A stretch of DNA of 64,000 nucleotides, from the sequence record MZ475893.1. One strand, given 5' to 3'. The notes beneath the pieces are model-generated. The model was not told the origin of the DNA. It did not search any database and worked only from the letters and a program-made list of their open reading frames with translations. Shown here one piece after another: positions 8,379 through 33,666 of this stretch. The position numbers and the translations under genes were made by a program. Numbering within the stretch: the first letter of the stretch is position 1; every line of letters begins with the position of its first letter.

Positions 8379-8857
8379 TGGACAAAACAGAGAGCGCAAG
8401 CTCCAATAGCGAAAGGCACCGAATCTATTTCAGGCAGCCGCAACGAGTACCTCCCTTCGATACAGCTTTTGTTCGTGCGTCAGACACCACGAGCCTCAAG
8501 CTGCTTCTCTCGGCTGCTCCTGAACATTGTCAGATCATATTGTTTACGGACGGCACCGGCACTGCTTATGCCATGAAACGCCTCTTTAAGCGCAAATTCC
8601 TTTTGAACTCTCAAGCTCTACAACTCGATCTGCCTACGATAACACTCACGGGTCAGGTCGTTTATCAGTTCGTTCGCGGCGGCTCTGTGCGCGACAAACT
8701 GAGTCGTTACTTCTGTGCTGGACCAAGCTATCTGCATGAGCTGGCACAAACGTCCGTTGAATCAGACGTTCTCGATATGTTCTGTTTGGGCTTAGACTTC
8801 CATACGGTATTGCGTGCGAGGGAGCGTGGCCGTTCTATTGTCTTTACGGAGGAATAA
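8375..8857 (+). CDS. hypothetical protein
   Basis: 160 aa, translationally coupled. Confidence 0.7.
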   Translation: MMDKTESASSNSERHRIYFRQPQRVPPFDTAFVRASDTTSLKLLLSAAPEHCQIILFTDGTGTAYAMKRLFKRKFLLNSQALQLDLPTITLTGQVVYQFVRGGSVRDKLSRYFCAGPSYLHELAQTSVESDVLDMFCLGLDFHTVLRARERGRSIVFTEE

Positions 8858-9885
8858 TGGGAAGAACGTTTGCGTCAGTGACTCGCCACTCACCTGTCGC
8901 TCAAATACCTAAGATGGAAATCAAATACGGTAAGAAGCCTATGCTTCACGTAGTTGATGCATCGAACTGGATGTGTCGTGCTTACTTTGCCACACGCGAT
9001 AAGCCTGTGTATGCATCAGACGGTACGCCCATCTACGGCCTGCGCCAGTTTCTGTATATGGTTCAGGACCTGATTGACATAGCAGCCAAAGACCCTAACG
9101 GTTGCTACATTGCTTTCTGCTTCGACCCAAGCTCAAACGAAACGTGGCGTTATCGTGCTCTGCAAAACTGGGCAGCAACCAAGAAGAAGAAATTCATCAG
9201 AGGCGTGTTCAAGAAAAGCAGCGACTATAAAGGCAACCGAGACCGCTCTCAAACAGCCGAGCTTGGTGTGCAGATGATTTTAGCGCGGCAGATTCTTGAA
9301 CTTGCAGGCTTCTATGTTGGCCTGAAAAAGCCATACGAGTGCGACGACCTTGTAGGAACTATCTGCCATAGATTCAAGCGCAAGTATCTGATCAAACTCT
9401 ACTCACGCGATAAGGACTATGTACAGCTTGTTGATCACAAGAACGTTGAACTCATTATGCAGGCGCAGTCTAACGCAAAAGAACGCCGCTTCGATTTCAA
9501 AACAGCGAAAGGCTTCTTCGGTGTTCCTGCCGACCGTGTTATCGATATGCTCGCGCTGTGCGGTGATGGTGTCGATAACGTTCCAGGCATTCCTGGTATT
9601 GGCGAGAAGACTGCTATTGAACATATTCATCGCCACGGTGGTGCTATTGAACTTCGTGACGCTCTGCTTAATGGCAAAGTGAAATCGAATGCAGGCTGGG
9701 CTAAAGCATTGCGCTCAGAGATTCCTTCGATGGACCTTGAACTCCAGATGGAACTTGTCACTATCTGCCGCAACGTGCCTGGCATGCCTCGCACTATTGA
9801 TGCCTTTGCTAATCGCACGCCCGATGTTAAAGCGCTCAAAGCAGTTAAGAAGCGTCTGGGCCTGACTAAACTATTACACGTATAG
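8857..9885 (+). CDS. 5'-3' exonuclease / flap endonuclease (PolI N-terminal, T4 RNase H / T5 D15 family)
   Basis: VVDASNWMCRAYF, YECDDLVGT, SRDKDYVQLV, LCGDGVDNVPGIPGIGEKTA (H3TH motif). Confidence 0.92.
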   Translation: MGRTFASVTRHSPVAQIPKMEIKYGKKPMLHVVDASNWMCRAYFATRDKPVYASDGTPIYGLRQFLYMVQDLIDIAAKDPNGCYIAFCFDPSSNETWRYRALQNWAATKKKKFIRGVFKKSSDYKGNRDRSQTAELGVQMILARQILELAGFYVGLKKPYECDDLVGTICHRFKRKYLIKLYSRDKDYVQLVDHKNVELIMQAQSNAKERRFDFKTAKGFFGVPADRVIDMLALCGDGVDNVPGIPGIGEKTAIEHIHRHGGAIELRDALLNGKVKSNAGWAKALRSEIPSMDLELQMELVTICRNVPGMPRTIDAFANRTPDVKALKAVKKRLGLTKLLHV

Positions 9886-12111: not shown

Positions 12112-12492
12112 GTGGATAAGAATGAAATCACGTTGTTGATTGACAGTCTGAACGGCAATCGCAATTTCCCAATCGATCCAGAAGCTGCAATAGGCATGAC
12201 CCTTGAACAGTTCATCAAAACCAATGGGAACTTTGTGTTTCTCATGAATGATGCGCTCGTCCGTGACATGGTAAGTAAGCAGCATGAGTACGATCCAAAC
12301 TTCGTACCAGCTACTACTCTCGACGAAATCAACAACGGTCTTATGGGAACTTTCCACGGCGTCAATGTGTACAGCACTTGGGTGTATCGTGCTCCTGGGG
12401 ATCTGCCTGCGGAAGCGAAGCCTCGTTTCGGTATGTATCGCGCCGACCTAAAACAAATCTTCCCGTTGACTAAACATTTTATCGTAAAGTAA
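12112..12492 (+). CDS. hypothetical protein
   Basis: 126 aa, GTG start, AAGGA RBS. Confidence 0.65.
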   Translation: MDKNEITLLIDSLNGNRNFPIDPEAAIGMTLEQFIKTNGNFVFLMNDALVRDMVSKQHEYDPNFVPATTLDEINNGLMGTFHGVNVYSTWVYRAPGDLPAEAKPRFGMYRADLKQIFPLTKHFIVK

Positions 12493-12543: not shown

Positions 12544-13314
12544 ATGAGCAATATCGATACCACAATGCCTGAAGGCAAATGGGAGTTCAATGAGTCGGTT
12601 GCTTGCGTGTTTGATAACATGCTGCAAAACTCTATCCCGTCTTATGGCCGTATGCGTGACCTGACGTATCGTCTGGGTCGTCGCTTCGTAACCCCGGGTT
12701 CAGCTATCGTCGATCTCGGTGCTTCACTCGGCCGAGCTATCGAGCCGTTTGCAAAAGAGTTCGGCAAGTATGACTACCATCATGCTGCTGACGCTCCTGG
12801 CGAAGACTACGAAACAGGCAATCACTATAGCCTGTTCGAAGTAGCGCCTGCGATGCGTGAACGTCTGGTGCAGAATGAAGTGCTCAACTCAGTGAATGCC
12901 AAACTGGAAAGTGAATCGCTGGTAGATACTGACACGTTTATGTTCGACGGTCAGGTGCATTGCTCGTTGATTCTGAGTGTGCTAACTCTCCAGTTCACGC
13001 CGATTGAACATCGTCAACACATTCTGGAAAACGTGTACAACTCACTGCAACCAGGCGGCGCATTCATCCTCGTTGAGAAGGTGTTAGGCGATAACAACTA
13101 TCTCGACAAAATGCTGGTGGACACCTACTACCAAATGAAAGGCGGTAACGGTTACAGCGCCGAGTCGATTGCGACTAAACGTAAGTCACTGGAAGGTGTA
13201 CTCGTTCCTGTTAAAGCAGCGTGGAACGAAGAACTGTTGCGTAAAGCAGGCTTCGGTCAGGTAGAAAGTTTCTATCGCGACCTGAACTTCGCAGGATGGA
13301 TTGCTATTAAGTAA
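12544..13314 (+). CDS. cmoA: carboxy-S-adenosyl-L-methionine synthase (CmoA-like)
   Basis: WEFNESVACVFDNMLQNSIPSY, DLGASLG, TLQF, LQPGGAFILVEK, KRKSLEGVL (Arg aligning with E. coli R199), AGF...NF at C-terminus; collinear with E. coli CmoA along its length. Confidence 0.85.
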   Translation: MSNIDTTMPEGKWEFNESVACVFDNMLQNSIPSYGRMRDLTYRLGRRFVTPGSAIVDLGASLGRAIEPFAKEFGKYDYHHAADAPGEDYETGNHYSLFEVAPAMRERLVQNEVLNSVNAKLESESLVDTDTFMFDGQVHCSLILSVLTLQFTPIEHRQHILENVYNSLQPGGAFILVEKVLGDNNYLDKMLVDTYYQMKGGNGYSAESIATKRKSLEGVLVPVKAAWNEELLRKAGFGQVESFYRDLNFAGWIAIK

Positions 13315-13323
13315 GGAAATACT

Positions 13324-14586
13324 ATGAAAGTAAACGGGCGTATCTTAGCTATCGTCCCACACAAGACAATGCAAGACCGTACCAAGTCGGGTGTGGGTTC
13401 GTACATTGATGGACTAGAGGCATACGGCTTCTGCGACTTTATCACGGACGGAGAGAACAGCTCCGTTGCGAAAAGTCAGTGGTTCACTTACGGTGATACT
13501 ACTCTCAGTGACGGTTATAAGATAGGGCATATCCAGAGCGAGTTGCTGATTGCACTTGAGCGCTTGCCTTACCGTGCGATTATTTGCAGCACGTATGAGG
13601 CGATTGAAGCCTGCGTGTCTCTGGGACTGCCAAAGATTATGCCCGTTTACTATCGCACGCACAACAGCTTTTTGCTCACACAAGATCTCAAGGGTCTTGG
13701 TGCAGAGAAGATCCACCGTGCGTTGTTGCAAGCACGCGTCACAGGGCTGCGCATCCTTGCTAACTGTGATTCGACTGCGATCAATCTTGCTGAGCGCTAT
13801 AAGACGCCAGCACACGTTGCCTACAACTCGTTCTCGGTGCCTGACTACAACCCACCAGCTCGGCGTGTTCCCCAGCTGTTGATTATCTGTCGCTATGAGA
13901 AGGTCAAGCGCACGTTGTTTGCTGCGCGTATTGCTGCTGCCTCAGGATTACCCGTTCGTGTTATGACAGGCAGTGATCGTCAAGTACGCAATTGGGAGAA
14001 AGAGCTGGCTGAGGCGGGTGTCAAAGAATACACCGTCGTCAGTGGCCTTAGTGGTAAACAGAAACTCGAATTTATAGGCGCTTGCACAGTAGCCCTTTCT
14101 ACTGCGAGCGTTGAATCTTTTGCTAACGGTGTGCGTGAGTCTATCCCCTACTGTCCTACCTTTATCGTGCAAACATCCAAGTACGATTGGGCTAAGGACT
14201 ATACGCGCTTCTGTACTGCCGACAAGCATGTTCATATCAGAACTGTTGATCGCGTATCGGACCAAGCCGTAGCTGAAATCGGAAGTGAGATAGCGCGAGT
14301 TGCCACCACACGTTATCTGACAGGTCCGCAGCGTAAACAACTACTGACTGCTTGGGCAAAGCAAGTTGATCGTGGTTGGTCCGACTTTGTTCAGAAGGCT
14401 GTTGTTGACGATGACGGCAAGCCGCTGCGCACCGAGCTATATCAAGAACTGATCGACAAATCAGAAATCGATTGGTCACAAACGCCTACGCTAATGCGTA
14501 CTGTAAATGCGTTACATAAATGCCACGCTCGTTTGGGCCTGACATTTGATGGCACTAAAATCAAATATAAGAGGAAGCGCAAATGA
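13324..14586 (+). CDS. GT-B (GT4-like) glycosyltransferase
   Basis: N-terminal SGVGSY, ILANCDSTA, LLIICRYEKVKR, SVESFANGVRESI (cf. ExFGxxxxEA). Confidence 0.7.
   Translation: MKVNGRILAIVPHKTMQDRTKSGVGSYIDGLEAYGFCDFITDGENSSVAKSQWFTYGDTTLSDGYKIGHIQSELLIALERLPYRAIICSTYEAIEACVSLGLPKIMPVYYRTHNSFLLTQDLKGLGAEKIHRALLQARVTGLRILANCDSTAINLAERYKTPAHVAYNSFSVPDYNPPARRVPQLLIICRYEKVKRTLFAARIAAASGLPVRVMTGSDRQVRNWEKELAEAGVKEYTVVSGLSGKQKLEFIGACTVALSTASVESFANGVRESIPYCPTFIVQTSKYDWAKDYTRFCTADKHVHIRTVDRVSDQAVAEIGSEIARVATTRYLTGPQRKQLLTAWAKQVDRGWSDFVQKAVVDDDGKPLRTELYQELIDKSEIDWSQTPTLMRTVNALHKCHARLGLTFDGTKIKYKRKRK
14501..14508 (+). promoter_or_regulatory. CTGTAAAT motif
   Basis: 74 nt before ATG 14583. Confidence 0.4.
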
Positions 14587-15659
14587 GTGTTATCGGTGAT
14601 ATTTATAACATACCACAACCTTTCGCAATGTATGTCGGGAATTGTGAGACGCGTGCTCAAGCCAAAGTTGCTGCTGGTACAATCGAGTGGGCGCCAGAGA
14701 AAGTGTGCTGCACCGTAGATGATGGTAACAACCTGTTCCCCAACGTACCTTCAATCAACCCTGCTGACGTGCATAAGACAGATGCAGAAACTTTAGTGAT
14801 TGGCTGTGCACCTTTCGGCGGCCGCATTGACGAGCACATGGACAAAGCTATTCGTAGCGCTATCTATCGTGGACGCAACATTGCTGCTGCTATGCATACG
14901 CGCCTGGCGGATAATCCCGAATACGTTGAGCTGGCTGATCGCTACAACGTCAAGCTGTATGACTTCCGTCATCGTCCTGATGCGTACCCACTTGGTACCG
15001 GTGAGAAGCGTAGCGGTCTGCGTCTGTTAACTGTCGGTACTGATAGCTCCTGCGGCAAGAAGTTTACCACGCTATCTCTGTATCGTGAACTCAAGCGCAT
15101 CCACGCAGACACTGTGTTTTGCTCTACTGGGCAAACAGGCTTCCTGATTAGCGGTTGCGGTATCAACAACGACACGATTGTTGCTGACTTCCTCGCCGGT
15201 GCTGCTGAATCACTTTCGCCTGCTGGTCCTGCTGATCGTATCTATCTGATTGAAGGTCAAGGTGCTATCACTCACCCAGCATACACAGGCGGTAGCATGA
15301 GTCTGATTGCCGGCTCGCAGCCTGATCATCTCATCCTGTGCCACGCATGGAACCGTCAGAATCAGTTGGGCGTTAAGCGTAAGCCTGACCTTGATTTTGA
15401 GATGCGTGCTAATATTGAAGCGGCGCGTATTCACGGTCTCCACCCGACCTACATCGGTATCAGCATTAACTTCTCTGAGTGTGATTTGACACAGGACGAG
15501 CAAGATAAAATCCTGTACCAACTCGCATCAACGTATGAGATTCCCGTGTTCGACCCATCACAAGACACTTCTGTGTTGCGTGACCTCGCTCGTATGTTAG
15601 CAACTAAAGCCAAAGCAAGGAGCCTCGATGGCCAAGCATCCCCTGCGCAAGCTGTTTGA
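14583..15659 (+). CDS. DUF1611 family protein (P-loop fold; DgcN-like)
   Basis: LVIGCAPFGG, AAAMH, LTVGTDSSCGKKFT, STGQTG, ADFLAGAAE, IEGQGAITHPAY, GSQPDHLILCH. Confidence 0.85.
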   Translation: MSVIGDIYNIPQPFAMYVGNCETRAQAKVAAGTIEWAPEKVCCTVDDGNNLFPNVPSINPADVHKTDAETLVIGCAPFGGRIDEHMDKAIRSAIYRGRNIAAAMHTRLADNPEYVELADRYNVKLYDFRHRPDAYPLGTGEKRSGLRLLTVGTDSSCGKKFTTLSLYRELKRIHADTVFCSTGQTGFLISGCGINNDTIVADFLAGAAESLSPAGPADRIYLIEGQGAITHPAYTGGSMSLIAGSQPDHLILCHAWNRQNQLGVKRKPDLDFEMRANIEAARIHGLHPTYIGISINFSECDLTQDEQDKILYQLASTYEIPVFDPSQDTSVLRDLARMLATKAKARSLDGQASPAQAV

Positions 15660-16503
15660 ACAGCATGTGAAAAAAGAAGTGAAAGCAGACAAGGTAGCTG
15701 TGCTGCTTTCATCTGGCCTCGATGGTTTGGTCAGTGCGTTAGCTGCACACGATCTCGGTAAGAAGGTGCACGCCTTCACTTTCCAAATGGGTGACAACCC
15801 TAGCTTTGACAGTCGCCACGCACAGATTGTTGCGCAGAAGATGGGGTGGGAGTTCACTCTCGTTAAAGTTCCCACCAGCGTGTCTGCTATCGCATTAGCG
15901 TGGCGCGTGCTGCATTCCAAGTATCGCTGCATTAAGAAGCGTGACTACGAGTGTGCGTACCCTATGGTCTATTGCTACAAGGCAATCAAAGACGCTGGGT
16001 ACAAGTATGTGCTAAGCGGGCTGGTGGCCGATGGTTACTTCCTGTATAACCGTAACACGCATATTCAGAAAATCAGCGGGCCACACTCTGACGCTCAGAA
16101 GTATCATGAGTTCCGTACTCAATACTTTAGTCCGTGGCTTAAACACGGTAAGAAGTCTCTGGGCGTTGACGGGTATAACCCGAGCGGCATGTTGCAGCAT
16201 GAGATGTTGTGCGATAACTTCGGCCTGATTCACGTTAACCCGTGGATGCAAAACAAGGTGTTTGACTACTTCATCAAATACACTTGGCAGGAGTTGAATC
16301 AGCCTAAGCAGAAGATGCCACTAACCGAAGCGTGGGCAGAACACATTGCTCTTGTTGGTCATCGTCCACACAGGGGCTATCAGACAGAAGCCAAAGTGCC
16401 TGAATACTTTGAGCATCTGATCGAGAACCCTGAGATTAACTTCAACGGGCGCAAGCGCATCATGGACGTGGCACGCGACTGGTCCAAACGAGAGCCTGAA
16501 TAA
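15628..16503 (+). CDS. asparagine-synthetase-like ATP-dependent amide ligase, synthetase domain only
   Basis: PP-loop VAVLLSSGLDG, HAFTF, VLSGLVADGYF (cf. SGxGADE), NPW...QKMPL; no N-terminal Cys-glutaminase domain. Confidence 0.8.
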   Translation: MAKHPLRKLFEQHVKKEVKADKVAVLLSSGLDGLVSALAAHDLGKKVHAFTFQMGDNPSFDSRHAQIVAQKMGWEFTLVKVPTSVSAIALAWRVLHSKYRCIKKRDYECAYPMVYCYKAIKDAGYKYVLSGLVADGYFLYNRNTHIQKISGPHSDAQKYHEFRTQYFSPWLKHGKKSLGVDGYNPSGMLQHEMLCDNFGLIHVNPWMQNKVFDYFIKYTWQELNQPKQKMPLTEAWAEHIALVGHRPHRGYQTEAKVPEYFEHLIENPEINFNGRKRIMDVARDWSKREPE

Positions 16504-16758
16504 ATGCATCCTGTTATCACAGACTTTCTTGGGCCTATCGTTAAGCGGCTGGGCTTATTCACTGCTATATTCGGTTTTGTCGGCGTGCTGCTGTCTGTGA
16601 TCGCAGTGCTTGTGTGCCGCCCAGAAGTCCTTCAATACGAATACGATACTGTAAATAGACTTCGTACTGAGGGTATTGTATTCTTGGGTAAAGGCGCTCT
16701 CGTTTACATCGTAGGCGAGATACTTGAAGGCACGTTCAAGTGGAGAAAAGATGATTAA
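16504..16758 (+). CDS. small membrane protein
   Basis: 84 aa with two hydrophobic stretches. Confidence 0.6.
   Translation: MHPVITDFLGPIVKRLGLFTAIFGFVGVLLSVIAVLVCRPEVLQYEYDTVNRLRTEGIVFLGKGALVYIVGEILEGTFKWRKDD
16649..16656 (+). promoter_or_regulatory. CTGTAAAT motif
   Basis: 94 nt before ATG 16751. Confidence 0.35.
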
Positions 16759-17014
16759 CAAATTCGTGATGAAGAAGACTCCGACCATTGAAGCCTGTCA
16801 GTGGAATGGAGAGAACAAGGAAGAGATTGAAGCCTTCCTTGGCGATAGCGGATTCGTTGTTGGGCGTTACGTGCAGATTGGTGTTCTGGATAAATACCAG
16901 AAGCCAACTATTGCTAACGTAAGCGTAGGCAACTATGTGATCAAGCGCGATGATGGTAAGTTCTATGCCATTACTGCGCAAGATCTGTTTGAGAATTATG
17001 TATTAGCAGATTGA
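16751..17014 (+). CDS. conserved phage hypothetical protein
   Basis: IEACQWNGEN...VGNYVIKRDDGKFY...FENY pattern common in phage small proteins; GGAG RBS. Confidence 0.65.
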   Translation: MINKFVMKKTPTIEACQWNGENKEEIEAFLGDSGFVVGRYVQIGVLDKYQKPTIANVSVGNYVIKRDDGKFYAITAQDLFENYVLAD

Positions 17015-17021
17015 GGCCATA

Positions 17022-17474
17022 ATGAATCTGTTTTCTATTTTAAAACAGCAAGTGAAGAAATCCCTGACGACCGAAGCAACGCTTGAGCCAGAAGTGCGCA
17101 AACACTTTGACTGGCGTTTCAGTGTTGACGTCAAAGGTCTGATGTACATTGTAGGCAAGACAGGCGCTAACACCTGCTTCTATCTTGAGCCAGGTCACGT
17201 TGAGCCTACTGCCTGCTATCCTGATGAACTGCTTGCGAAGATTGATAGCTGGGGCGCTGCGAAGTACGTGTCCTACGCTGTCTACTTCAAGAAGTTCAGT
17301 AGCCCTGTAGCTGAGAACATCAAGACGCTTGAGCAGGCCAAGACAGGCAAGCCTAAAGCGTTTAAGAAAGGCTACTTTATCTGTGGCGTAACACCGAAAG
17401 GTAAGCGCGTCAAACTGTGTCGTCTGCACAACAGCCTAAGCGGTATGCAGTGGGTTGATGTAGACCAGAAGTAA
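17022..17474 (+). CDS. hypothetical protein
   Basis: 150 aa, GAGG RBS. Confidence 0.7.
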   Translation: MNLFSILKQQVKKSLTTEATLEPEVRKHFDWRFSVDVKGLMYIVGKTGANTCFYLEPGHVEPTACYPDELLAKIDSWGAAKYVSYAVYFKKFSSPVAENIKTLEQAKTGKPKAFKKGYFICGVTPKGKRVKLCRLHNSLSGMQWVDVDQK

Positions 17475-27730: not shown

Positions 27731-28831
27731 ATGACAGGTCCTCTCGATCTCACTAACCCACAGCACTTCGAACTGTACTCGCTGCACAGTGTTGATGCAC
27801 AGTATATCAATCTGTGTGACGCACTCCTAACGCAGGGTACGCACGAATCTGACCCAGAGCGCACTGACGATACGTGGCATACGCTGATCGGTATTGGCTT
27901 CCAGTTGTCTAACACCAACATCGCTTTCCCTGCGCTGCTGTCTAAGCGTGTCAACGTCCGTGCAGCTATCGATGAATCCTGCTGGTTCGCACGCGGTGAA
28001 ACGAACATCGCAACTCTCGGTTCTAAAATCTGGAACGAGTGGGCAGATGAAGAAGGTGAGAACGGTCCTATCTACGGCTTCCAGTACCGTAACTGGCCTG
28101 ACATTAAAGTGTTCAACACTGTCGAAGGCATGATTGAGCAGCACATCCCACCAGCGATGATTGAGCGCATCTCGAAAGAGATTAACCGCATGAAGGCGCA
28201 GGGCTATATCGAAACTGCGTTGCCTGACGGTCGCGTGTTGTACGAAGGCTATATCGATCAGTACGCTGATGCACTGCGTCAAATCATGGCGCGTAGTCGT
28301 AGCCGCCGCATTCGTGTGCAAGCGTTCAACCCAGGTTACGTTGGTATGCAGAGCCTGCCGCCGTGTCATACCGAGTTTGAGTTCAACGTGACCAAAGCCA
28401 CTGCGTATGAGATTGCGCAGATGGAAGCACGCTCAATGCGCCCTGACGCTGACTCACTGCATATCGTGGTGACGATGCGCAGCAATGACGCGCTATTGGG
28501 CAGGCCCTTCAATATCGTGGGCTACAGCGCCATGCACCAGTTGTTTGCGAAGTGGGCTGGTCTGAACGTTGGTTCGTTTACTCTGAACGTGACCAATATG
28601 CACATGTACGATCACCACCGCGAAGCGTATGCACAACAGCGTGAGCAGTGGCTGGAGCTACAGACGCAGATGCAGACGACAGGCAAACCTGTTGTTTACC
28701 CTACCCTCGAAATCACTGACGACATTCTGGGCCTGACGCCAGAAGAGCTGCTGGATAACGTCAACGTCGATTGGTTCGAGCTGGTGGACTACTCTCCTAA
28801 ACCTGCTGTTAAAGGACGCGTAACCAAATGA
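27731..28831 (+). CDS. thyA: thymidylate synthase
   Basis: LLSKRV, IWNEWAD, GPIYGFQYR, SRRI, LPPCH, RSNDALLGRPFN, NMHMYDHH. Confidence 0.93.
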   Translation: MTGPLDLTNPQHFELYSLHSVDAQYINLCDALLTQGTHESDPERTDDTWHTLIGIGFQLSNTNIAFPALLSKRVNVRAAIDESCWFARGETNIATLGSKIWNEWADEEGENGPIYGFQYRNWPDIKVFNTVEGMIEQHIPPAMIERISKEINRMKAQGYIETALPDGRVLYEGYIDQYADALRQIMARSRSRRIRVQAFNPGYVGMQSLPPCHTEFEFNVTKATAYEIAQMEARSMRPDADSLHIVVTMRSNDALLGRPFNIVGYSAMHQLFAKWAGLNVGSFTLNVTNMHMYDHHREAYAQQREQWLELQTQMQTTGKPVVYPTLEITDDILGLTPEELLDNVNVDWFELVDYSPKPAVKGRVTK

Positions 28832-29490
28832 TGCTAATCAGCCGCATTGCTGCATTCCTGTATGTTGGATATGCAGAGTCAGTGGAGGACATTCCACGTT
28901 TGCTCGTCGAAAAAGTTAAGGTGCGCATCGAAGATCCCGATTGGGACCCGTTTGATGACGTTACCGTTGAAGATGCACCGCCTATCCTAGAAATGACAGG
29001 CAAGGTCATCTATCATCTGCCACTCAACTGCTTCCTGATTGACGGTCGCATGGAGCAGGATGAATCGTCCGAAGATACGCTCAAGATGCAGAAGCATTGT
29101 CAGACCAACTTCTTCAAGCACAAGCAGACACGCAACGGTCGTGTGGGCATTGCCGTGGACAGCATGATCAGAGAACTGTCTTATGCAGAGGCACAGCACC
29201 CTAACTGGCCTACTGAGCCGCTGCACGCTGGCGCTATCCTCGCAGAAGAAGCAGGTGAGTGTCTGCGTGATTGCGTGTCATACGATGAAACAGGGCGTGA
29301 TGACCTGCTAGCCTCTATGGCCGAAGAAGCTGTGCAGACAGGTGCGATGGCGATTCGTTTTCTGATCAATGCGCATCGTTCTAAAGAGCGCACGCTGCCT
29401 CGCTCTACAGTACGTGACCTGCTGTCAGACACGTCCATTCCTTTGGCTGAGCGTGTTGCTAAACTTCTTGATGTGGTGGACGCTAAATGA
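28828..29490 (+). CDS. protein with C-terminal MazG-like NTP pyrophosphohydrolase helix pair
   Basis: ILAEEAGE...EEAVQTGAMAIR (ExxE...E pattern). Confidence 0.55.
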   Translation: MMLISRIAAFLYVGYAESVEDIPRLLVEKVKVRIEDPDWDPFDDVTVEDAPPILEMTGKVIYHLPLNCFLIDGRMEQDESSEDTLKMQKHCQTNFFKHKQTRNGRVGIAVDSMIRELSYAEAQHPNWPTEPLHAGAILAEEAGECLRDCVSYDETGRDDLLASMAEEAVQTGAMAIRFLINAHRSKERTLPRSTVRDLLSDTSIPLAERVAKLLDVVDAK

Positions 29491-30398
29491 AACTACTTGC
29501 ACTTATCCCATCTGCTACCACCAATGTGTTCCGCACGCTGCATTGTGTAGGCACGGCAGAAGAGTTCCCTGTAGGCGAGCATCCTAAGTGGTCTGGCTTT
29601 GGTTTGAATATGACTAACGTCAAAATCATTCCTGACCTGGCTAAAGACGCCGTGCCTGATTCGTTCTATGTCACTATCGATAGCCACCTCGACTGGTCTG
29701 TTGATCTTGATCGTATCGATACGTTCAGCGCTGATTATCTCATCTGGTGCGGTAAGCATACGCCTTCAATTGAAGCTGTGCTCGAAGCCCACATGATTAA
29801 AGGCCAGTTGCCAAATCTGGTGCAGGACTTCGATGCTTTTGTCGCTGATCTGCAAGAGCGTCTGGACAACATGACCAGCCTCGCTAAAGATCGTATGACC
29901 ATCTCAGGCAGCACGCTGATCGATAGCGACACCACAGCCAAGTACAACCTGTGGGCTATCTATCGTCACTGTCTGATGTTAGACAACAAGATGGTCCTGC
30001 TGTACGGTAAAGACAATCACATCCATGTGTCCGACACGCACGTATCTGAAAAGGGTATCGGCTGGTGGTTGACCGAGCACAACAAACACATGATGAGCAT
30101 TGCACAGCAAAACGATCTGCTTGCCGCTTACATTACGTTTGAACGCGATAGCTCTGGCTATACGTTTGTTGGTGCTGACGGTACTCAGGTTAAACGTCCT
30201 GTCGAAAGCAGCGAGTTCATGCACATGGCGCATCACGGCCTGTTCCCTAAAGTTGTAGTGCGTGAAGACGCAGACGGCCGTAACTTCGAACTGTCGTTTG
30301 ATTACGCCGAATACTTCCCACAAGCGTATCACGATTTTGTCAATCATGCGTGGGCCGGCCGTTCTGATCGTTCACGCGATTTGGTTCGCTTCATCTGA
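29487..30398 (+). CDS. hypothetical protein
   Basis: 303 aa, coupled. Confidence 0.7.
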   Translation: MKLLALIPSATTNVFRTLHCVGTAEEFPVGEHPKWSGFGLNMTNVKIIPDLAKDAVPDSFYVTIDSHLDWSVDLDRIDTFSADYLIWCGKHTPSIEAVLEAHMIKGQLPNLVQDFDAFVADLQERLDNMTSLAKDRMTISGSTLIDSDTTAKYNLWAIYRHCLMLDNKMVLLYGKDNHIHVSDTHVSEKGIGWWLTEHNKHMMSIAQQNDLLAAYITFERDSSGYTFVGADGTQVKRPVESSEFMHMAHHGLFPKVVVREDADGRNFELSFDYAEYFPQAYHDFVNHAWAGRSDRSRDLVRFI

Positions 30399-30830: not shown

Positions 30831-31529
30831 ATGGCAAAAATTGCTAAAGCAAAGGAAGGGAAAAAGAAAAGCAACCCTATGTTGATTGACCTGAAAAAGT
30901 TCAAGTCAGTTAAACAGCTTAAGGGTGCGAAGTACAACCCTCGTTTCATTACAGACAGCCGACTGAGAGCGCTCGAAGGTTCTTTGGGCAGCTTCGGTGA
31001 TTTGTCTGGCGTGGTGTTCAACAACAGCGTAGACAGTGGCGTGCTGATCTCAGGCCACCAGCGTCTCAAGTCGATTGAGAAGTGGGACTCGCGCATTGAG
31101 ATTCAGCAAACGTCTGACAAGTACGGCACGGTAGCGCTGGGTTATATCCATGCCACCAGCGCCAAAGGTAAAACGATCAGCATCCCACTGCGTATCGTTA
31201 ACTGGTCAGATAAGAAAGTGGAGTTTGCTGCTAACATTGCTGCGAATGCCCACGGCGGTGAGTTCGATAACAAAAAGCTCGCGTCACTTGTCGAGAAGCT
31301 GGACCTGACTACAATCAAGCCAGCACTTATCGGGCTTGACCCGTTAGAGATTCGCGGCCTGCAACAGACGCTGAGCAAACAAGCTATCGTCGAGCAGGAA
31401 AAGCGTGTTGGTAAAACAACAGGCAAAATGAACGGCAGCACCGGCGAGTTCAAAGAGTACACGACTGATGAAGTTGGTACTGCGCTGACCTGCACCTGCC
31501 CACGTTGTGGCTTTAAGTTCGAGGGATAA
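30831..31529 (+). CDS. ParB/sulfiredoxin-like N-terminal domain protein with C-terminal CPxCG
   Basis: YNPRFI, LISGHQRL, NAHGGEFD, CTCPRCGFKF. Confidence 0.75.
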   Translation: MAKIAKAKEGKKKSNPMLIDLKKFKSVKQLKGAKYNPRFITDSRLRALEGSLGSFGDLSGVVFNNSVDSGVLISGHQRLKSIEKWDSRIEIQQTSDKYGTVALGYIHATSAKGKTISIPLRIVNWSDKKVEFAANIAANAHGGEFDNKKLASLVEKLDLTTIKPALIGLDPLEIRGLQQTLSKQAIVEQEKRVGKTTGKMNGSTGEFKEYTTDEVGTALTCTCPRCGFKFEG

Positions 31530-31530
31530 C

Positions 31531-33666
31531 ATGATCATCAAGCCGCCTACAATGAAAGAGATTAATAAGCTGCCCAAGCCTTGGTCAGGTATGAGTTTCT
31601 TTGCAGGTTGCGGTGGTTCATCTACCGGTCACAAGATGGCCGGTATTAACATCCTACTGAGCAACGAGTTCGTGGACGCGGCTCGTGAATCGTATGAAGC
31701 GAACCATCCAACAACCAAAGTGTTGCCCCACGATATTCGTCGTCTTGACCCGAAAAAGCTGCTTAGCTATTGCGGCCTGAGCCAAGGCGAACTGGACTTG
31801 CTTGACGGCAGTCCTCCGTGCTTTACCGAAGACACGTTCATTCATACTGACACTGGTATGAAGTTCATCACTGATATGCGCATCGGTGACTTCGCTATGA
31901 CCTCTGTTGGTAAGTATCATCCTGTGTATGACACGATGGTGCGCCCGTATGACGGTCAGATGCACAGAATTGAAACGCTGCTCGGTCAGAACAATGCAAC
32001 ACCTGAGCATCCATTCTTTGTTCGTCGTCAGAATGAAGAAACTGGCGGGTACAGTGAGCCGTTCTGGTGTGACGCTAAAGATGTGCAGGAAGGCGATTTG
32101 TTGGGTACGCCTCGTGTTACGCCTGACATGGGTGAAGCACACACGCATGAGATTATCTCGTCGTTGACTGCGCAGCTTGTGCGTTGGATTGCATTGCCTG
32201 AGTTTTGGTGGCTGATTGGTCACTGGTGCAATCGCGGTGCAATCGATAAGATTCGTGGTGTCGATGTTATTCAGTTCACCTCGATGACAGCGATGGAAAA
32301 CTCGCTGGTGGAACAAGCGTTCGACGTGCTCAAGTTAAGCAGCATCAACAGCGCTTCGTCCGACATGGGCGTTCACCGTAAGACCGTCCGTGTTGTTATG
32401 GACACAGACCTGTTGCTGTTCTTGCGTATGTTTATCGCACAGGGCAAGAAGTCTATGTCCCGCCGTATGCCAGGCATGATCTTCCATCTGGCCAAAGAGC
32501 TGAAACAGCAATTCATTCTCGGCTATCTGGGTCGTGATTACGTCACAGCAATGGGCGTTGGTCATGCGTTAGAGGCTGACTCAAAGCGCTTCCTCGTTGA
32601 GATGAATTACCTGTGCTGCTCTGCGTTCAACAGACCGCTGTTCGATGCAATGTTGTTCACTGACTTGCATTACGGCAGTCCTATGTTACCGCCGAGTCGC
32701 TTCATCACCAAAGAGCACATTGGCTTCCTGTTCTTACAAGAAGAGGTTAATTTCTTCTTTGAGTTCGAGCCGGAAGACCCGCATCTGTGGGTAGAAGTGA
32801 TTGAGAACTTTACGCACCATGAAACGTGCAACGTCTACAACTTCTCAGTCAGTGTTGATGAGACGTATGTTGCTAACGGTATGGTCGTGCATAACTGCAA
32901 AGGGTTCTCGACTGCGGGTGTGAAAGAAGACGGCTGGGGCAAAGAGGTTAAGTACAGCGGCAACAAGTATCAGCAAGTCGATGACCTGTTCGATCAGTAT
33001 TGCCGTATGCTCAAGCACATGCAGCCTAAAACGTTCACTGCGGAAAACGTTAGTGGCCTCGTTAAAGGTGCGTCGAAGGGTTACTTCATTGAAATCATGA
33101 AGACCTTTGATCAGCTAGGCTACTATGTGCGAGCACCGTTGCTTAATGCTGCGTGGCTCGGTGTGCCTCAGTCGCGTGAGCGTATCATCTTTATGGGTGT
33201 GCGCAAAGACGTGGCTAAAGCACTCGGCTATAAGACTGCGTTGACTGCTGTGCCTGATGTAACACCTCAATCAAGCATGGCGTTCCTTGCAGATGCACTG
33301 CCGAACATTCGTCGGTATAAAGGTACGGAGCGTGACATTATCAAGTATCTGCCTGCTGTTAACGGGCCGATGCCTACGATTACCGCTGCTGACGCTATCG
33401 CATACGAAACAGCACGCTTCTCCTCTGCTGGCTTCATTGAAGACGACAAAGGGCACAGACGCAAGCTGACGATTGACGAACTCAAAGTTGTATCAGGCAT
33501 GCCTAGTGATTACGTGCTCACAGGTAAGTTTGAAGAACAATGGGAACGTCTCGGTCGTGTGTGCGTACCTGCAATGACGTGTGCAGCGGCAAGCGCGTTG
33601 ATACGCCATGTGCTTGAGCCGTACGCGAAGCTGCGTAAAAAGAAACCTGGGGATCGTTTTCGTTAA
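31531..33666 (+). CDS. C5-cytosine DNA methyltransferase family enzyme, intein-containing; candidate carboxymethyltransferase
   Basis: FFAGCGG (I), NEF (II), DIRRL (III), GSPP-intein-CKGFS (IV), ENVSGL (VI), QSRERI (VIII), RKLTIDE (IX), LGRVCVP (X, Asn replaced by Arg). Confidence 0.9.
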   Translation: MIIKPPTMKEINKLPKPWSGMSFFAGCGGSSTGHKMAGINILLSNEFVDAARESYEANHPTTKVLPHDIRRLDPKKLLSYCGLSQGELDLLDGSPPCFTEDTFIHTDTGMKFITDMRIGDFAMTSVGKYHPVYDTMVRPYDGQMHRIETLLGQNNATPEHPFFVRRQNEETGGYSEPFWCDAKDVQEGDLLGTPRVTPDMGEAHTHEIISSLTAQLVRWIALPEFWWLIGHWCNRGAIDKIRGVDVIQFTSMTAMENSLVEQAFDVLKLSSINSASSDMGVHRKTVRVVMDTDLLLFLRMFIAQGKKSMSRRMPGMIFHLAKELKQQFILGYLGRDYVTAMGVGHALEADSKRFLVEMNYLCCSAFNRPLFDAMLFTDLHYGSPMLPPSRFITKEHIGFLFLQEEVNFFFEFEPEDPHLWVEVIENFTHHETCNVYNFSVSVDETYVANGMVVHNCKGFSTAGVKEDGWGKEVKYSGNKYQQVDDLFDQYCRMLKHMQPKTFTAENVSGLVKGASKGYFIEIMKTFDQLGYYVRAPLLNAAWLGVPQSRERIIFMGVRKDVAKALGYKTALTAVPDVTPQSSMAFLADALPNIRRYKGTERDIIKYLPAVNGPMPTITAADAIAYETARFSSAGFIEDDKGHRRKLTIDELKVVSGMPSDYVLTGKFEEQWERLGRVCVPAMTCAAASALIRHVLEPYAKLRKKKPGDRFR
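31819..32895 (+). mobile_element. intein (359 aa) in catalytic PC motif, degenerate LAGLIDADG region
   Basis: Starts CFTEDTFI, block B ATPEHPFF, remnant WLIGHWCNRG and FILGYLGRD, ends YNFSV...VANGMVVHN followed by +1 Cys. Confidence 0.92.

What the first reader, a model, noticed from the sequence alone, without database searches (positions are those of the whole stretch)
33541..33570. C5-MTase motif X reads G-R-V-C instead of G-N-A/S-V: predicted carboxymethyltransferase
Seen: ...QWERLGRVCVP..., Arg codon at 33556-33558, while all other C5-MTase motifs are intact. Known: the motif X Asn sits next to the SAM methyl group, and the engineered M.MpeI N374K change lets that enzyme use carboxy-SAM to make 5-carboxymethylcytosine. 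Inference: a natural basic residue here binds the Cx-SAM carboxylate, which links this enzyme to the CmoA-like gene at 12544.
Basis: partly seen in the sequence, partly recalled or inferred. Interest (0 to 1): 0.88.

Follow-up and report, generated by a model that had tools for sequence, protein, structure and literature searches.

The report
Intein-split phage DNA cytosine carboxymethyltransferase (CmoX)

Summary
Codon CGT at 33556-33558 gives ...QWERLGRVCVP..., and this Arg aligns with Asn-304 of M.HhaI, the motif X Asn of M.HaeIII, and Arg-350 of SpCmoX.

SpCmoX (PDB 8YF3) is a crystallised natural DNA cytosine C5-carboxymethyltransferase whose Arg-350 contacts the Cx-SAM carboxylate (PMC12783734). 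It is the best PDB match by sequence (E 5e-33) and by fold (TM 0.76).

The window is the first 64 kb of Erwinia phage pEa_SNUABM_45, where these genes are annotated as hypothetical. The gene (31531-33666) carries a 359-aa class-1 intein (31819-32895) inserted inside motif IV. The +1 Cys is the catalytic Cys, and intein-less relatives read exactly the predicted splice product.

The phage also encodes CmoA (12544-13314) and a CmoY-like amide ligase (15628-16503, 33% identical to SpCmoY). It has no CmoB.

Not previously described:
- the intein at the catalytic Cys;
- the split locus, with cmoX 15 kb from the cmoA-cmoY cluster;
- a GT4-like glycosyltransferase and a DgcN-like (DUF1611) enzyme between cmoA and cmoY.

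The last point suggests a more elaborate, still unknown cytosine hypermodification. No chemistry was tested here.

The parts
30831..31529 (+). ParB-like (ParBc-type) protein, translationally coupled to cmoX. Its stop is at 31527-31529 and the cmoX ATG is at 31531.
   Evidence: phrog_620 ParB-like partition protein, E 2.3e-31. No Pfam hit at E<=0.01. A homologue lies directly upstream of cmoX in every related locus examined except S-B43. ParBc association with CmoX is noted in PMC12783734.
31531..31818 (+). CmoX N-extein (96 aa): SAM-type cofactor-binding motifs I-III and the S-P-P of motif IV.
   Evidence: 55% identical to SpCmoX residues 22-98. A GAGGGA Shine-Dalgarno sequence precedes ATG 31531. 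dN/dS is 0.05-0.09 against AD1, Alexandra and Y3.
31819..32895 (+). Class-1 intein, 359 aa (Cys1 ... His-Asn), with a degenerate LAGLIDADG-like insert domain.
   Evidence: Boundaries are. Hint_2 and Intein_splicing hits are just below the Pfam cut-off; TIGR01443 intein C-terminal region scores 17.2, above its cut-off of 15.6. Cys1, the T-P-E-H block B, VVHN and Cys+1 are all present. Intein-less relatives read DLLDGSPPCKGFSTAG. Metagenome alleles with and without an intein at the same site exist (L010, L012). The intein is present in all 48 Erwinia, 2 Dickeya and 1 Yersinia phage records matched. dN/dS is 0.17-0.25.
32896..33666 (+). CmoX C-extein (256 aa plus stop). It begins with Cys+1, the catalytic Cys of motif IV, and carries motifs VI, VIII, the target-recognition region, and motifs IX and X.
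   Evidence: Best PDB sequence hit is 8YF3 (SpCmoX), E 5.1e-33, against 3e-12 for M.HaeIII and 3e-6 for M.HhaI. PF00145 E 6e-38. The Foldseek top hit of the precursor model is 8YF3, E 2.6e-16, TMt 0.76.
33556..33558 (+). Arg codon (CGT). This is Arg-676 of the 711-aa precursor and Arg-221 of the C-extein, at the motif X position that is Asn in methyltransferases.
   Evidence: Aligns to SpCmoX R350, M.HhaI N304 and the M.HaeIII motif X Asn. Arg occurs in 118 of 120 closest homologues.
12544..13314 (+). CmoA homologue (carboxy-SAM synthase; uses SAM and prephenate).
   Evidence: TIGR00740 E 1.2e-39, but 136 bits is below the equivalog cut-off of 193. PDB 4GEK E. coli CmoA, E 4e-28, with the Lys-Arg of the Cx-SAM carboxylate site conserved. 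29% identical to EcCmoA and 28% to the biochemically validated SpCmoA. The Y3 orthologue is already annotated as Cx-SAM synthase.
13324..14586 (+). GT-B / GT4-like glycosyltransferase candidate (420 aa), previously without any annotation.
   Evidence: No Pfam, NCBIfam, PHROG or PDB sequence hit. AF2 model has pLDDT 82.5 and pTM 0.82. Foldseek matches BshA, SdgB, SenB, MshA and the phage HY126 glycosyltransferase with probability 1.0, E about 1e-9 and TMt up to 0.66. E264 and E272 are invariant, spaced as in an E-x7-E motif. Only 7 homologue clusters exist in the database, and the two examined in context (P0126, P0127) lie in cmo clusters.
14583..15659 (+). DUF1611 / DgcN-like enzyme (358 aa), overlapping both neighbouring genes.
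   Evidence: PF07755 E 1.4e-46 and PF17396 E 5.7e-18. NF041892 DgcN E 4.9e-85, but 285 bits is below the equivalog cut-off of 480. PDB 7XRJ E 6.8e-50. It co-occurs with the GT4-like gene and cmoY in L007, L010 and L011.
15628..16503 (+). CmoY-like ATP-dependent amide ligase (asparagine-synthetase C-terminal domain only; no glutaminase domain).
   Evidence: 33% identical to SpCmoY over 275 residues, E 6e-50. PF00733 E 1.7e-13. It matches positions 235-394 of the AsnB model only.
16751..17014 (+). 87-aa ORF conserved just downstream of the cluster in AD1, Y3 and the SNUABM phages. Possible MazG-like fragment; membership of the module is uncertain.
   Evidence: phrog_36935 E 1e-44. Weak match to phrog_4159 nucleotide pyrophosphohydrolase, E 0.003. 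Synteny shown.
17022..17474 (+). 150-aa protein of unknown function that travels with cmoA/cmoY clusters.
   Evidence: phrog_23597, unknown function. Homologues lie inside or next to cmo clusters in L007/L009 (47% id, E 1e-44), L014 (E 3e-26), PaBG between cmoA and the ligase (E 8e-20), and L011 (E 2e-10).

Best explanation
Gene 31531-33666 encodes the precursor of a CmoX-family DNA cytosine C5-carboxymethyltransferase.

Proposed steps:
1. The 359-aa class-1 intein excises itself. This joins ...GSPP to CKGFSTAG... and creates the motif IV Pro-Cys catalytic site, so the enzyme cannot act before splicing.
2. The phage CmoA homologue converts SAM and prephenate into carboxy-SAM.
3. The spliced enzyme binds carboxy-SAM, with Arg-676 pairing with the cofactor's carboxylate. 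It uses the standard Cys-addition mechanism of C5-methyltransferases and transfers a carboxymethyl group to C5 of cytosines in phage DNA, giving 5cxmC.
4. The CmoY-like ligase then amidates that carboxyl group with an amine, probably an amino acid.
5. The GT4-like glycosyltransferase and the DgcN-like enzyme encoded between cmoA and cmoY probably decorate the product further.

The likely benefit is protection of phage DNA from host nucleases.

Shown here: the sequence, the intein boundaries, homology and alignment of the Arg, the fold, gene content and synteny, and purifying selection.
Inferred: splicing competence, cofactor choice, the chemical products, and the biological role.
For: - Arg aligns to SpCmoX R350, HhaI N304 and the HaeIII Asn.
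- 8YF3 is the top hit by sequence (E 5e-33) and by fold (E 2.6e-16, TMt 0.76).
- SpCmoX wild type uses only Cx-SAM, R350 contacts the carboxymethyl group, and R350N is inactive (PMC12783734).
- 118 of 120 closest homologues have Arg.
- The paper's operational CmoX definition (SPPC motif plus R350) is met.
- CmoA homology with the Lys-Arg conserved.
- CmoY homology, 33% identity, E 6e-50.
- No CmoB homologue in any record of the 50,697-record phage collection apart from one 3.4-kb Salmonella-derived record; this phage is in that collection.
- cmoX, cmoA and the ligase are contiguous in PaBG, L010/L011 and L014.
- L014 has a chorismate mutase gene (the enzyme that makes prephenate) between cmoX and cmoA.
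- Intein catalytic residues are intact, and empty-site alleles match the predicted junction exactly.
- Extein dN/dS is 0.05-0.12.
- The GT4 fold of the 420-aa protein and its linkage to cmo clusters in the two homologue contexts examined.
Against: - No biochemical or mass-spectrometric data exist for this phage or its close relatives. Nothing on DNA modification was found in the Erwinia and Dickeya phage papers checked.
- Identity to SpCmoX is moderate: 31% over the C-extein and 55% over the N-extein.
- The target-recognition region does not align with SpCmoX, so sequence specificity is unknown.
- cmoX lies about 18 kb from cmoA and about 15 kb from the end of the cmoA-cmoY cluster, rather than next to it.
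- The CmoA homologue scores below NCBIfam's equivalog cut-off.
- Intein Pfam scores are slightly below the gathering thresholds, and splicing was not demonstrated.
- The engineered M.MpeI N374K variant suggests that a basic residue here need not abolish SAM use completely (from my own knowledge of that work; not checked here).
Confidence: 0.85

Rival explanations
1. It is a dual-cofactor enzyme. The Arg allows Cx-SAM use but the enzyme still methylates with SAM, so phage DNA carries a mixture of 5mC and 5cxmC-derived bases, depending on the Cx-SAM/SAM ratio set by the phage CmoA.
For: The fold and all catalytic motifs are those of ordinary C5-methyltransferases. Three close relatives on the same backbone carry the canonical Gly-Asn, which shows the scaffold supports both states. 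From memory, the engineered M.MpeI N374K retains some SAM activity.
Against: Wild-type SpCmoX accepted only Cx-SAM, and its R350N mutant accepted neither cofactor (PMC12783734). Arg is almost fixed in the family (118 of 120).
Confidence: 0.1
2. It is an ordinary 5-methylcytosine methyltransferase. The Arg is a tolerated substitution, and the CmoA homologue serves another purpose, such as host tRNA cmo5U modification or SAM depletion.
For: cmoX and cmoA are about 18 kb apart in this genome. GenBank and RefSeq annotators of related phages called the gene a DNA-cytosine methyltransferase.
Against: The best structural and sequence relative is the carboxymethyltransferase, not a methyltransferase. 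No CmoB is available to use Cx-SAM on tRNA. A 5cxmC-specific ligase homologue sits in the cmoA cluster. cmoX and cmoA are adjacent in relatives.
Confidence: 0.04
3. The gene is non-functional. The intein no longer splices, so the protein is a dead precursor and the phage DNA is not modified by it.
For: The homing-endonuclease motifs of the intein are degenerate. Pfam intein scores are marginal. The AF2 model of the insert domain has low confidence.
Against: Cys1, the T-x-x-H block, the terminal His-Asn and Cys+1 are all intact and are conserved in AD1, Alexandra and Y3. The 359-codon intein stays in frame without stops in 51 phage records. Exteins are under strong purifying selection (dN/dS 0.05-0.12) and the intein under weaker purifying selection (0.17-0.25). 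Loss of endonuclease activity is usual for fixed inteins and does not affect splicing.
Confidence: 0.03

Closest known systems
SpCmoX, DNA cytosine C5-carboxymethyltransferase of Synechococcus phage S-B43 (PDB 8YF3; PMC12783734)
   Same: C5-MTase fold. SPPC motif IV. Arg at the HhaI-N304 position, which in SpCmoX binds the Cx-SAM carboxylate. Encoded in a phage that also has CmoA and an Asn-synthetase-like ligase. Top hit by sequence and by fold.
   Different: Only 31-55% identical. The target-recognition region does not align, so the GC specificity of SpCmoX cannot be transferred. This gene is interrupted by a 359-aa intein at the catalytic Cys. It is preceded by a ParB-like gene and lies about 15 kb from the cmoA-cmoY cluster, whereas S-B43 has cmoA-cmoY-cmoX contiguous.
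M.MpeI N374K, the engineered CpG carboxymethyltransferase
   Same: A basic residue replaces the motif X Asn next to the transferred group, which enables Cx-SAM use. M.MpeI structures are among the fold matches.
   Different: That change is engineered (Lys, CpG-specific). Here the residue is a natural Arg that is nearly fixed in a large phage family. Similarity to M.MpeI is much lower (E 6e-5) than to SpCmoX.
M.HhaI and M.HaeIII, canonical bacterial C5-methyltransferases
   Same: All ten motifs and the catalytic Cys/Glu/Arg residues are present, so the same covalent-catalysis mechanism is expected.
   Different: Motif X is Gly-Asn in those enzymes and Gly-Arg here. They use SAM and make 5mC.
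CmoA (E. coli, PDB 4GEK; SpCmoA) and SpCmoY
   Same: The window's 256-aa protein is 28-29% identical to both CmoAs over the full length, with the carboxylate-binding Lys-Arg conserved. The 291-aa protein is 33% identical to the glycine ligase SpCmoY.
   Different: The CmoA homologue has an insertion of about 10 residues and scores below the equivalog cut-off. The amine substrate of the ligase is unknown. A GT4-like gene and a DUF1611 gene lie between them, and these are absent from S-B43 and not mentioned in the paper.
Class-1 inteins with LAGLIDADG homing endonucleases in phage replication and nucleotide-metabolism genes
   Same: Insertion at the most conserved active-site motif. Cys1, TxxH, HisAsn and Cys+1 are present. 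Presence/absence polymorphism occurs at the same site in a metagenomic phage population.
   Different: The host protein is a DNA carboxymethyltransferase, and the +1 nucleophile doubles as its catalytic Cys. The endonuclease motifs are degenerate and the intein is fixed throughout the Erwinia/Dickeya clade.

Membership tests
CmoX (DNA cytosine C5-carboxymethyltransferase) | C5-cytosine methyltransferase fold with motifs I, IV, VI, VIII and X | tested here: met
   PF00145 E 6e-38 and TIGR00675 121 bits, above the cut-off of 100.65. Invariant motif residues listed. Fold match.
CmoX (DNA cytosine C5-carboxymethyltransferase) | SPPC motif (S95-P96-P97-C98 of SpCmoX), used as a filter in PMC12783734 | tested here: met
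   S94-P95-P96 are followed by intein Cys1 in the precursor and by Cys456 after splicing. Intein-less relatives read GSPPCKGFSTAG. That the junction forms in vivo is inferred.
CmoX (DNA cytosine C5-carboxymethyltransferase) | Arg at the position of SpCmoX R350 / M.HhaI N304 | tested here: met
   HMMER alignments to 8YF3, HhaI and HaeIII. BLASTP alignment to SpCmoX.
CmoX (DNA cytosine C5-carboxymethyltransferase) | Closer to the characterised CmoX than to characterised methyltransferases | tested here: met
   Sequence: E 5e-33 for 8YF3, against 3e-12 for HaeIII and 3e-6 for HhaI. Fold: Foldseek E 2.6e-16 for 8YF3, against 3e-12 for HhaI.
CmoX (DNA cytosine C5-carboxymethyltransferase) | A Cx-SAM synthase (CmoA) encoded by the same phage | tested here: met
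   The CmoA homologue at 12544-13314 is in the same genome but about 18 kb upstream. The two genes are adjacent in PaBG, L011 and L014.
CmoX (DNA cytosine C5-carboxymethyltransferase) | Cx-SAM-dependent formation of 5-carboxymethylcytosine in DNA | not testable with these tools
   Requires an enzyme assay or LC-MS of phage DNA.
CmoA (carboxy-SAM synthase) | Passes the curated equivalog model | tested here: not met
   TIGR00740 136.4 bits against a cut-off of 193.3. NF011995 102.7 bits against 285. It is best treated as a divergent phage CmoA homologue. The validated SpCmoA is just as distant from E. coli CmoA (the window protein is 28-29% identical to each).
CmoA (carboxy-SAM synthase) | Full-length homology to CmoA structures, with the Arg that binds the Cx-SAM carboxylate (E. 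coli R199) conserved | tested here: met
   4GEK E 4e-28. The Lys-Arg pair aligns. The residue's role is taken from my knowledge of the CmoA structure papers.
CmoY (5cxmC amide ligase) | Asn-synthetase-type adenylating domain homologous to SpCmoY and encoded with cmoA | tested here: met
   33% identity, E 6e-50, near full length. PF00733. The amine substrate cannot be tested here; the pocket residues are shown only in figures of the paper.
Class-1 intein | Cys/Ser1, block B TxxH, C-terminal His-Asn and a +1 Cys/Ser/Thr, plus an empty-site allele | tested here: met
   All four elements are present. TIGR01443 is above its cut-off. PF14890 scores 34.8 against a cut-off of 35.8, which is marginal. 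Empty-site alleles are P0001 and L012.
LAGLIDADG homing endonuclease (active) | Two LAGLIDADG motifs, each with a catalytic acidic residue | tested here: not met
   No Pfam hit. Aligned to the L010 intein (FLGDGW, SADGRE), the window reads WCNRGA, and the second motif reads GRDY with a 3-residue deletion.
GT4 (GT-B fold) glycosyltransferase, for the 420-aa ORF | GT-B two-Rossmann fold and an E-x7-E motif | tested here: met
   AF2 pTM 0.82. Foldseek probability 1.0 to BshA, SdgB, MshA and SenB. E264 and E272 are invariant. There is no sequence-profile hit for the window protein itself, and the donor and acceptor are unknown.
DgcN (D-glutamate N-acetyltransferase), for the DUF1611 ORF | Passes the equivalog model | tested here: not met
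   285 bits against a cut-off of 480. It belongs to the DUF1611 family (Pfam; 7XRJ E 7e-50) but is not an equivalog, and its substrate is unknown.

The most novel reading that the evidence does not exclude
Erwinia/Dickeya jumbo phages of this clade use 5-carboxymethylcytosine as the base for a hypermodification more complex than the published glycine amide. The candidate product is an amino-acid (possibly D-amino-acid) amide that is then glycosylated and/or N-acylated by the GT4-like and DgcN-like enzymes. Close relatives would make different end products, because their accessory genes differ:
- Y3: a divergent ligase plus a 2OG-Fe(II) oxygenase;
- AD1: DUF1611 only;
- this phage: GT4-like plus DUF1611;
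- the SNUABM_3/17/1 group: the same, plus an alanine-racemase-family enzyme.

In addition, the modification enzyme is gated by protein splicing at its catalytic Cys.
Probability: 0.4. Interest if true: 0.65.

Novelty: new member of a known kind. Interest (0 to 1): 0.4.

Why it matters
The central idea is that a natural Arg in motif X turns a C5-methyltransferase into a Cx-SAM-dependent carboxymethyltransferase fed by a phage CmoA. This was proved for Synechococcus phage S-B43 in December 2025, so it is no longer a discovery.

What this locus adds:

1. It extends the system to a cultivable group of about 50 sequenced jumbo phages of Erwinia amylovora and Dickeya. In the pEa_SNUABM_45 record the genes are annotated only as 'hypothetical protein'.
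2. It shows CmoX interrupted by an intein whose +1 nucleophile is the enzyme's own catalytic Cys. Nearly identical metagenomic alleles exist with and without an intein at the same site.
3. It reveals accessory enzymes travelling with cmoA/cmoY that the paper does not mention: a GT4-like glycosyltransferase, a DUF1611/DgcN-like enzyme, an alanine-racemase-family enzyme, a 2OG oxygenase, and a conserved 150-aa protein.
4. In related phages it reveals chorismate mutase and DAHP-synthase-family genes that could feed prephenate to CmoA. The paper raised prephenate supply as an open question.

Together these point to undiscovered cytosine hypermodifications. They also provide a natural series of closely related phages in which the chemistry could be worked out by mass spectrometry.

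Tried and rejected
- **126-aa ORF just upstream of cmoA (12112-12492).** I asked whether it is a chorismate mutase like the gene in that position in L014. It has no Pfam hit and no similarity. Rejected.
- **Prephenate-supply and related genes in the window.** I looked for chorismate mutase, DAHP synthase, racemase and CmoB homologues by tblastn. None was found at E<=0.2.
- **Intein-less close relatives.** I first suspected from two-piece megablast hits that some close Erwinia relatives lack the intein. This was wrong: tblastn with the intein shows that all 48 Erwinia, 2 Dickeya and 1 Yersinia records carry it. The split hits simply reflect faster divergence of the intein.
- **Amine substrate of the ligase.** I tried to predict it from the glycine-pocket residues of SpCmoY. 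The residues are shown only in figure images, not in text, so this could not be done.
- **Whether the paper's set of 5,615 CmoX sequences includes these phages.** The supplements hold no organism names, so this could not be determined.
- **Literature on DgcN/DUF1611.** One search was swamped by unrelated 'DGCN' hits. The exact-word search found only the AD1 paper and one unrelated paper.
- **Experimental evidence of modified DNA in these phages.** I found no mention of DNA modification in the AD1, PaBG and fire-blight review papers.
- **ThyA-like gene (27731-28831) as a dCMP hydroxymethylase.** It keeps the dUMP-type Asn in PFN, so this is not supported.
- **Handling of the intein.** I did not build or submit an artificially spliced sequence. 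The exteins were searched apart, or the unmodified precursor was used.
Full report
**What is in the sequence.**
The window is identical to bases 1-64000 of Erwinia phage pEa_SNUABM_45 (MZ475893.1). This is a 263.9-kb jumbo phage of Erwinia amylovora, and every gene discussed here is annotated 'hypothetical protein' in its record.

The finding lies in one open reading frame. The longest form starts at GTG 31507. The annotated start, conserved in relatives, is ATG 31531. It lies 1 nt after the stop of the upstream gene and is preceded by GAGGGA.

**The gene is interrupted by an intein, not by a stop or an intron.**
The protein reads ...DLLDGSPP | CFTEDTF...ANGMVVHN | CKGFSTAG.... The middle 359 residues (31819-32895) have the following intein features:
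- Hint and intein-splicing domain similarity (PF13403 and PF14890, just under the gathering score) and an above-threshold TIGR01443 C-terminal splicing region;
- Cys1, a T-P-E-H block B, a terminal His-Asn and a +1 Cys.

The closest intein-less homologues (63-70% identical, 345-353 aa) read DLLDGSPPCKGFSTAG without interruption. That is the exact product predicted for splicing.

Two contigs from related metagenome samples carry nearly identical exteins, one with an intein (743 aa, L010) and one without (341 aa, L012), at the same SPP|C site. That intein has intact LAGLIDADG motifs. The window's intein is homologous to it, but its motifs are degenerate: WCNRGA in place of FLGDGW, and a 3-residue deletion in the second motif.

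The intein is present in all 48 Erwinia, 2 Dickeya and 1 Yersinia phage records that match it. It therefore appears to be fixed and inherited vertically, with an endonuclease that is probably inactive.

Compared with AD1, Alexandra and Y3, the exteins give dN/dS of 0.05-0.12 and the intein 0.17-0.25. dS is saturated, so these values are approximate. The pattern argues against a dead gene.

The +1 Cys is the motif IV catalytic Cys, so the enzyme cannot be active before splicing. This last point is an inference.

**Does the Arg align with the motif X Asn?**
Yes. I searched the C-extein alone against all PDB sequences.
- The best hit is 8YF3 (E 5.1e-33). The alignment ...qwerlgRvcvpamt... / ...qtervgRmvpplmm... 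places the window's Arg on chain residue 350.
- The weaker alignments to M.HhaI (...ykqfgN) and M.HaeIII (...ykmigN-avp) place it on their motif X Asn.
- BLASTP against the S-B43 protein fetched from GenBank gives the same pairing.

An AlphaFold2 model of the unmodified 711-aa precursor has pLDDT above 90 over both exteins. Its best structural match is 8YF3 (E 2.6e-16, TM 0.76 normalised to the target, with the alignment spanning both exteins), ahead of M.HhaI, M.HaeIII and M.MpeI.

All other catalytic motifs are invariant in a 62-sequence alignment.

Among the 120 closest homologues, 118 have Arg in this column. Three (P0064, P0074, P0110) have the canonical Asn on the same QQWERLG backbone.

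**What is already known.**
8YF3 is SpCmoX of Synechococcus phage S-B43. Yang et al. (Nat Commun, December 2025; PMC12783734) showed the following:
- SpCmoX is a natural DNA cytosine C5-carboxymethyltransferase.
[quoted passage not shown] - A phage CmoA supplies Cx-SAM.
- An asparagine-synthetase-like ligase, CmoY, converts 5cxmC to its glycine amide.
- 5,615 phage sequences carry both SPPC and this Arg, often alongside CmoA, a ligase and a ParBc-domain protein.

The authors point out the parallel with the engineered M.MpeI N374K themselves. The paper does not mention inteins, Erwinia or Dickeya phages, DUF1611 or glycosyltransferases.

**The rest of the system in this window.**
- *CmoA homologue, 12544-13314.* TIGR00740 E 1e-39, although below the equivalog cut-off. 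PDB 4GEK E 4e-28. It is 29% identical to E. coli CmoA and 28% to SpCmoA. The Lys-Arg that aligns with E. coli K198-R199 is conserved.
- *CmoY-like ligase, 15628-16503.* It has an asparagine-synthetase C-terminal domain without the glutaminase domain, and is 33% identical to SpCmoY over 275 residues (E 6e-50).
- *No CmoB.* E. coli CmoB has no homologue in any record of the 50,697-record phage collection, apart from one 3.4-kb Salmonella-derived record. This phage is in that collection. The Cx-SAM is therefore unlikely to be meant for tRNA.
- *ParB-like gene, 30831-31529.* It lies immediately upstream of cmoX (phrog_620, E 2e-31). The ParB-cmoX pair is conserved in every related locus examined except S-B43.

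In Pseudomonas phage PaBG the order is ParB-cmoX-cmoA-orf-ligase, all contiguous. In this clade the system is split: cmoA-...-cmoY lies at 12.5-16.5 kb, and ParB-cmoX at 30.8-33.7 kb.

**What appears to be new.**
Two overlapping genes lie between cmoA and cmoY.

The 420-aa product of 13324-14586 has no hit in Pfam, NCBIfam, PHROGs or PDB sequences. It has only seven homologue clusters among 5.8 billion proteins. Its AlphaFold2 model (pLDDT 82.5, pTM 0.82) is a GT-B fold. It matches GT4-type glycosyltransferases (BshA, SdgB, SenB, MshA and a phage glycosyltransferase) with probability 1.0. E264 and E272 are invariant, spaced as an E-x7-E motif.

The next gene (14583-15659) belongs to DUF1611 and is related to DgcN (E 5e-85, below the equivalog cut-off; PDB 7XRJ E 7e-50).

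In metagenomic contigs the GT4-like gene sits next to DUF1611, a CmoY-like ligase and a CmoA-like gene. In L010 and L012 it lies directly after cmoX. In IMG/VR it occurs in only five contigs of about 265 kb, which match Erwinia-type jumbo phages in size.

The accessory genes differ among close relatives:
- Y3 has cmoA, a divergent ligase (28% identity) and a 2OG-Fe(II) oxygenase.
- AD1 has cmoA, DUF1611 and cmoY.
- This phage adds the GT4-like gene.
- The SNUABM_3/17/1 group and metagenome locus L007 also add an alanine-racemase-family gene (PF01168, E 4e-14).

A 150-aa protein of unknown function (17022-17474) also travels with cmo clusters in PaBG, L007, L011 and L014.

Two relatives carry genes that could raise the prephenate supply for CmoA. 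L014 has a chorismate mutase between cmoX and cmoA, and L007 has a DAHP-synthase-family gene after cmoY. The window has neither.

**Mechanism and confidence.**
The most likely sequence of events is:
1. protein splicing creates the active site;
2. CmoA makes Cx-SAM;
3. the enzyme transfers a carboxymethyl group to cytosine C5, with Arg-676 pairing with the carboxylate;
4. the CmoY homologue amidates the product;
5. the GT4-like and DgcN-like enzymes elaborate it further.

The result would be DNA protected from host nucleases. Family membership and the role of the Arg rest on strong homology to a crystallised, assayed enzyme (confidence 0.85). The identity of the final base is unknown. That it differs from the published glycine amide is plausible (about 0.4), based only on gene content.

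Rival readings are less likely, for the reasons given under each: a dual SAM/Cx-SAM enzyme, an ordinary methyltransferase, or a non-splicing dead precursor.

**Verdict.**
Novelty is limited to a new, unannotated member of the CmoX family with an unusual architecture and an expanded accessory gene set.

The exteins were searched separately, or the unmodified precursor was used, so no artificially spliced sequence was built or submitted.

Noticed in passing
L010:5783-8014 versus L012:1712-2737 (ENA GROS21 metagenome contigs): Nearly identical cmoX exteins occur with a 384-aa intein carrying intact LAGLIDADG motifs (L010) and without any intein (L012), at the same SPP|C site. This is a natural filled-site/empty-site pair, which suggests the intein is still mobile in that phage population.
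   Followed up: partly
L014:11022-11375 (277.8-kb metagenome jumbo-phage contig) and L007:12162-13025: A chorismate mutase (PF01817, E 9e-12) lies between cmoX and cmoA in L014. A DAHP-synthase-family gene (PF00793, E 2e-42) follows cmoY in L007. Both could boost prephenate, the co-substrate of CmoA. The window has no counterpart.
   Followed up: partly
L019:12291-13226 (also L020-L022) and L007:10322-11287: An alanine-racemase-family gene (PF01168, E 4e-14) is inserted between the DUF1611 gene and cmoY in sister Erwinia jumbo phages and in a metagenome relative. Together with the DgcN-like enzyme, this hints at D-amino-acid chemistry. The gene is absent from the window.
   Followed up: partly
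L017:4438-6233 (Erwinia phage Y3): Y3 keeps an 83%-identical CmoA, but its Asn-synthetase-like ligase is only 28% identical to the window's, and a 2OG-Fe(II) oxygenase (PF13640, E 2e-15) follows it. The ligase and accessory part of the module has been swapped between close relatives.
   Followed up: partly
window 17022-17474: This 150-aa protein (phrog_23597, no known function, no PDB or Pfam hit) has homologues embedded in or next to cmoA/cmoY clusters of PaBG, L007, L011 and L014. It is a candidate additional component of the modification module.
   Followed up: partly
proteins P0064, P0074, P0110 (metagenome contigs under 3.4 kb): Three of the 120 closest CmoX homologues read QQWERLGN, the canonical Asn, on an otherwise CmoX-type backbone. 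They may be natural switches back to methyltransferase, or intermediates. The contigs are too short to see whether cmoA is present.
   Followed up: no
window 27731-28831: This thymidylate-synthase homologue has 366 aa, about 100 more than usual, with an insertion of about 50 aa after residue 124. The catalytic Cys (PPCH) and the dUMP-specifying Asn (PFN) are retained, so it is of dUMP type. Whether it is a plain thymidylate synthase or a dUMP hydroxymethylase is open. It is followed by two conserved ORFs of unknown function (28828-30398).
   Followed up: partly
phage records ON568341.1, OP557969.1, ON286972.1 (about 350-kb E. coli jumbo phages): The intein gives weak tblastn matches (about 24-27% identity) inside genes annotated as cytosine-specific methyltransferases of unrelated E. 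coli jumbo phages. Inteins in phage C5-MTase-type genes may therefore be recurrent.
   Followed up: no
window 8857-9885: This 342-aa ORF matches only the 5'-3' exonuclease N-terminal part of DNA polymerase I (NF004397 positions 2-278 of 889). The same gene sits upstream of the cmoA cluster in L007, which shows conserved synteny of this genome arm.
   Followed up: no
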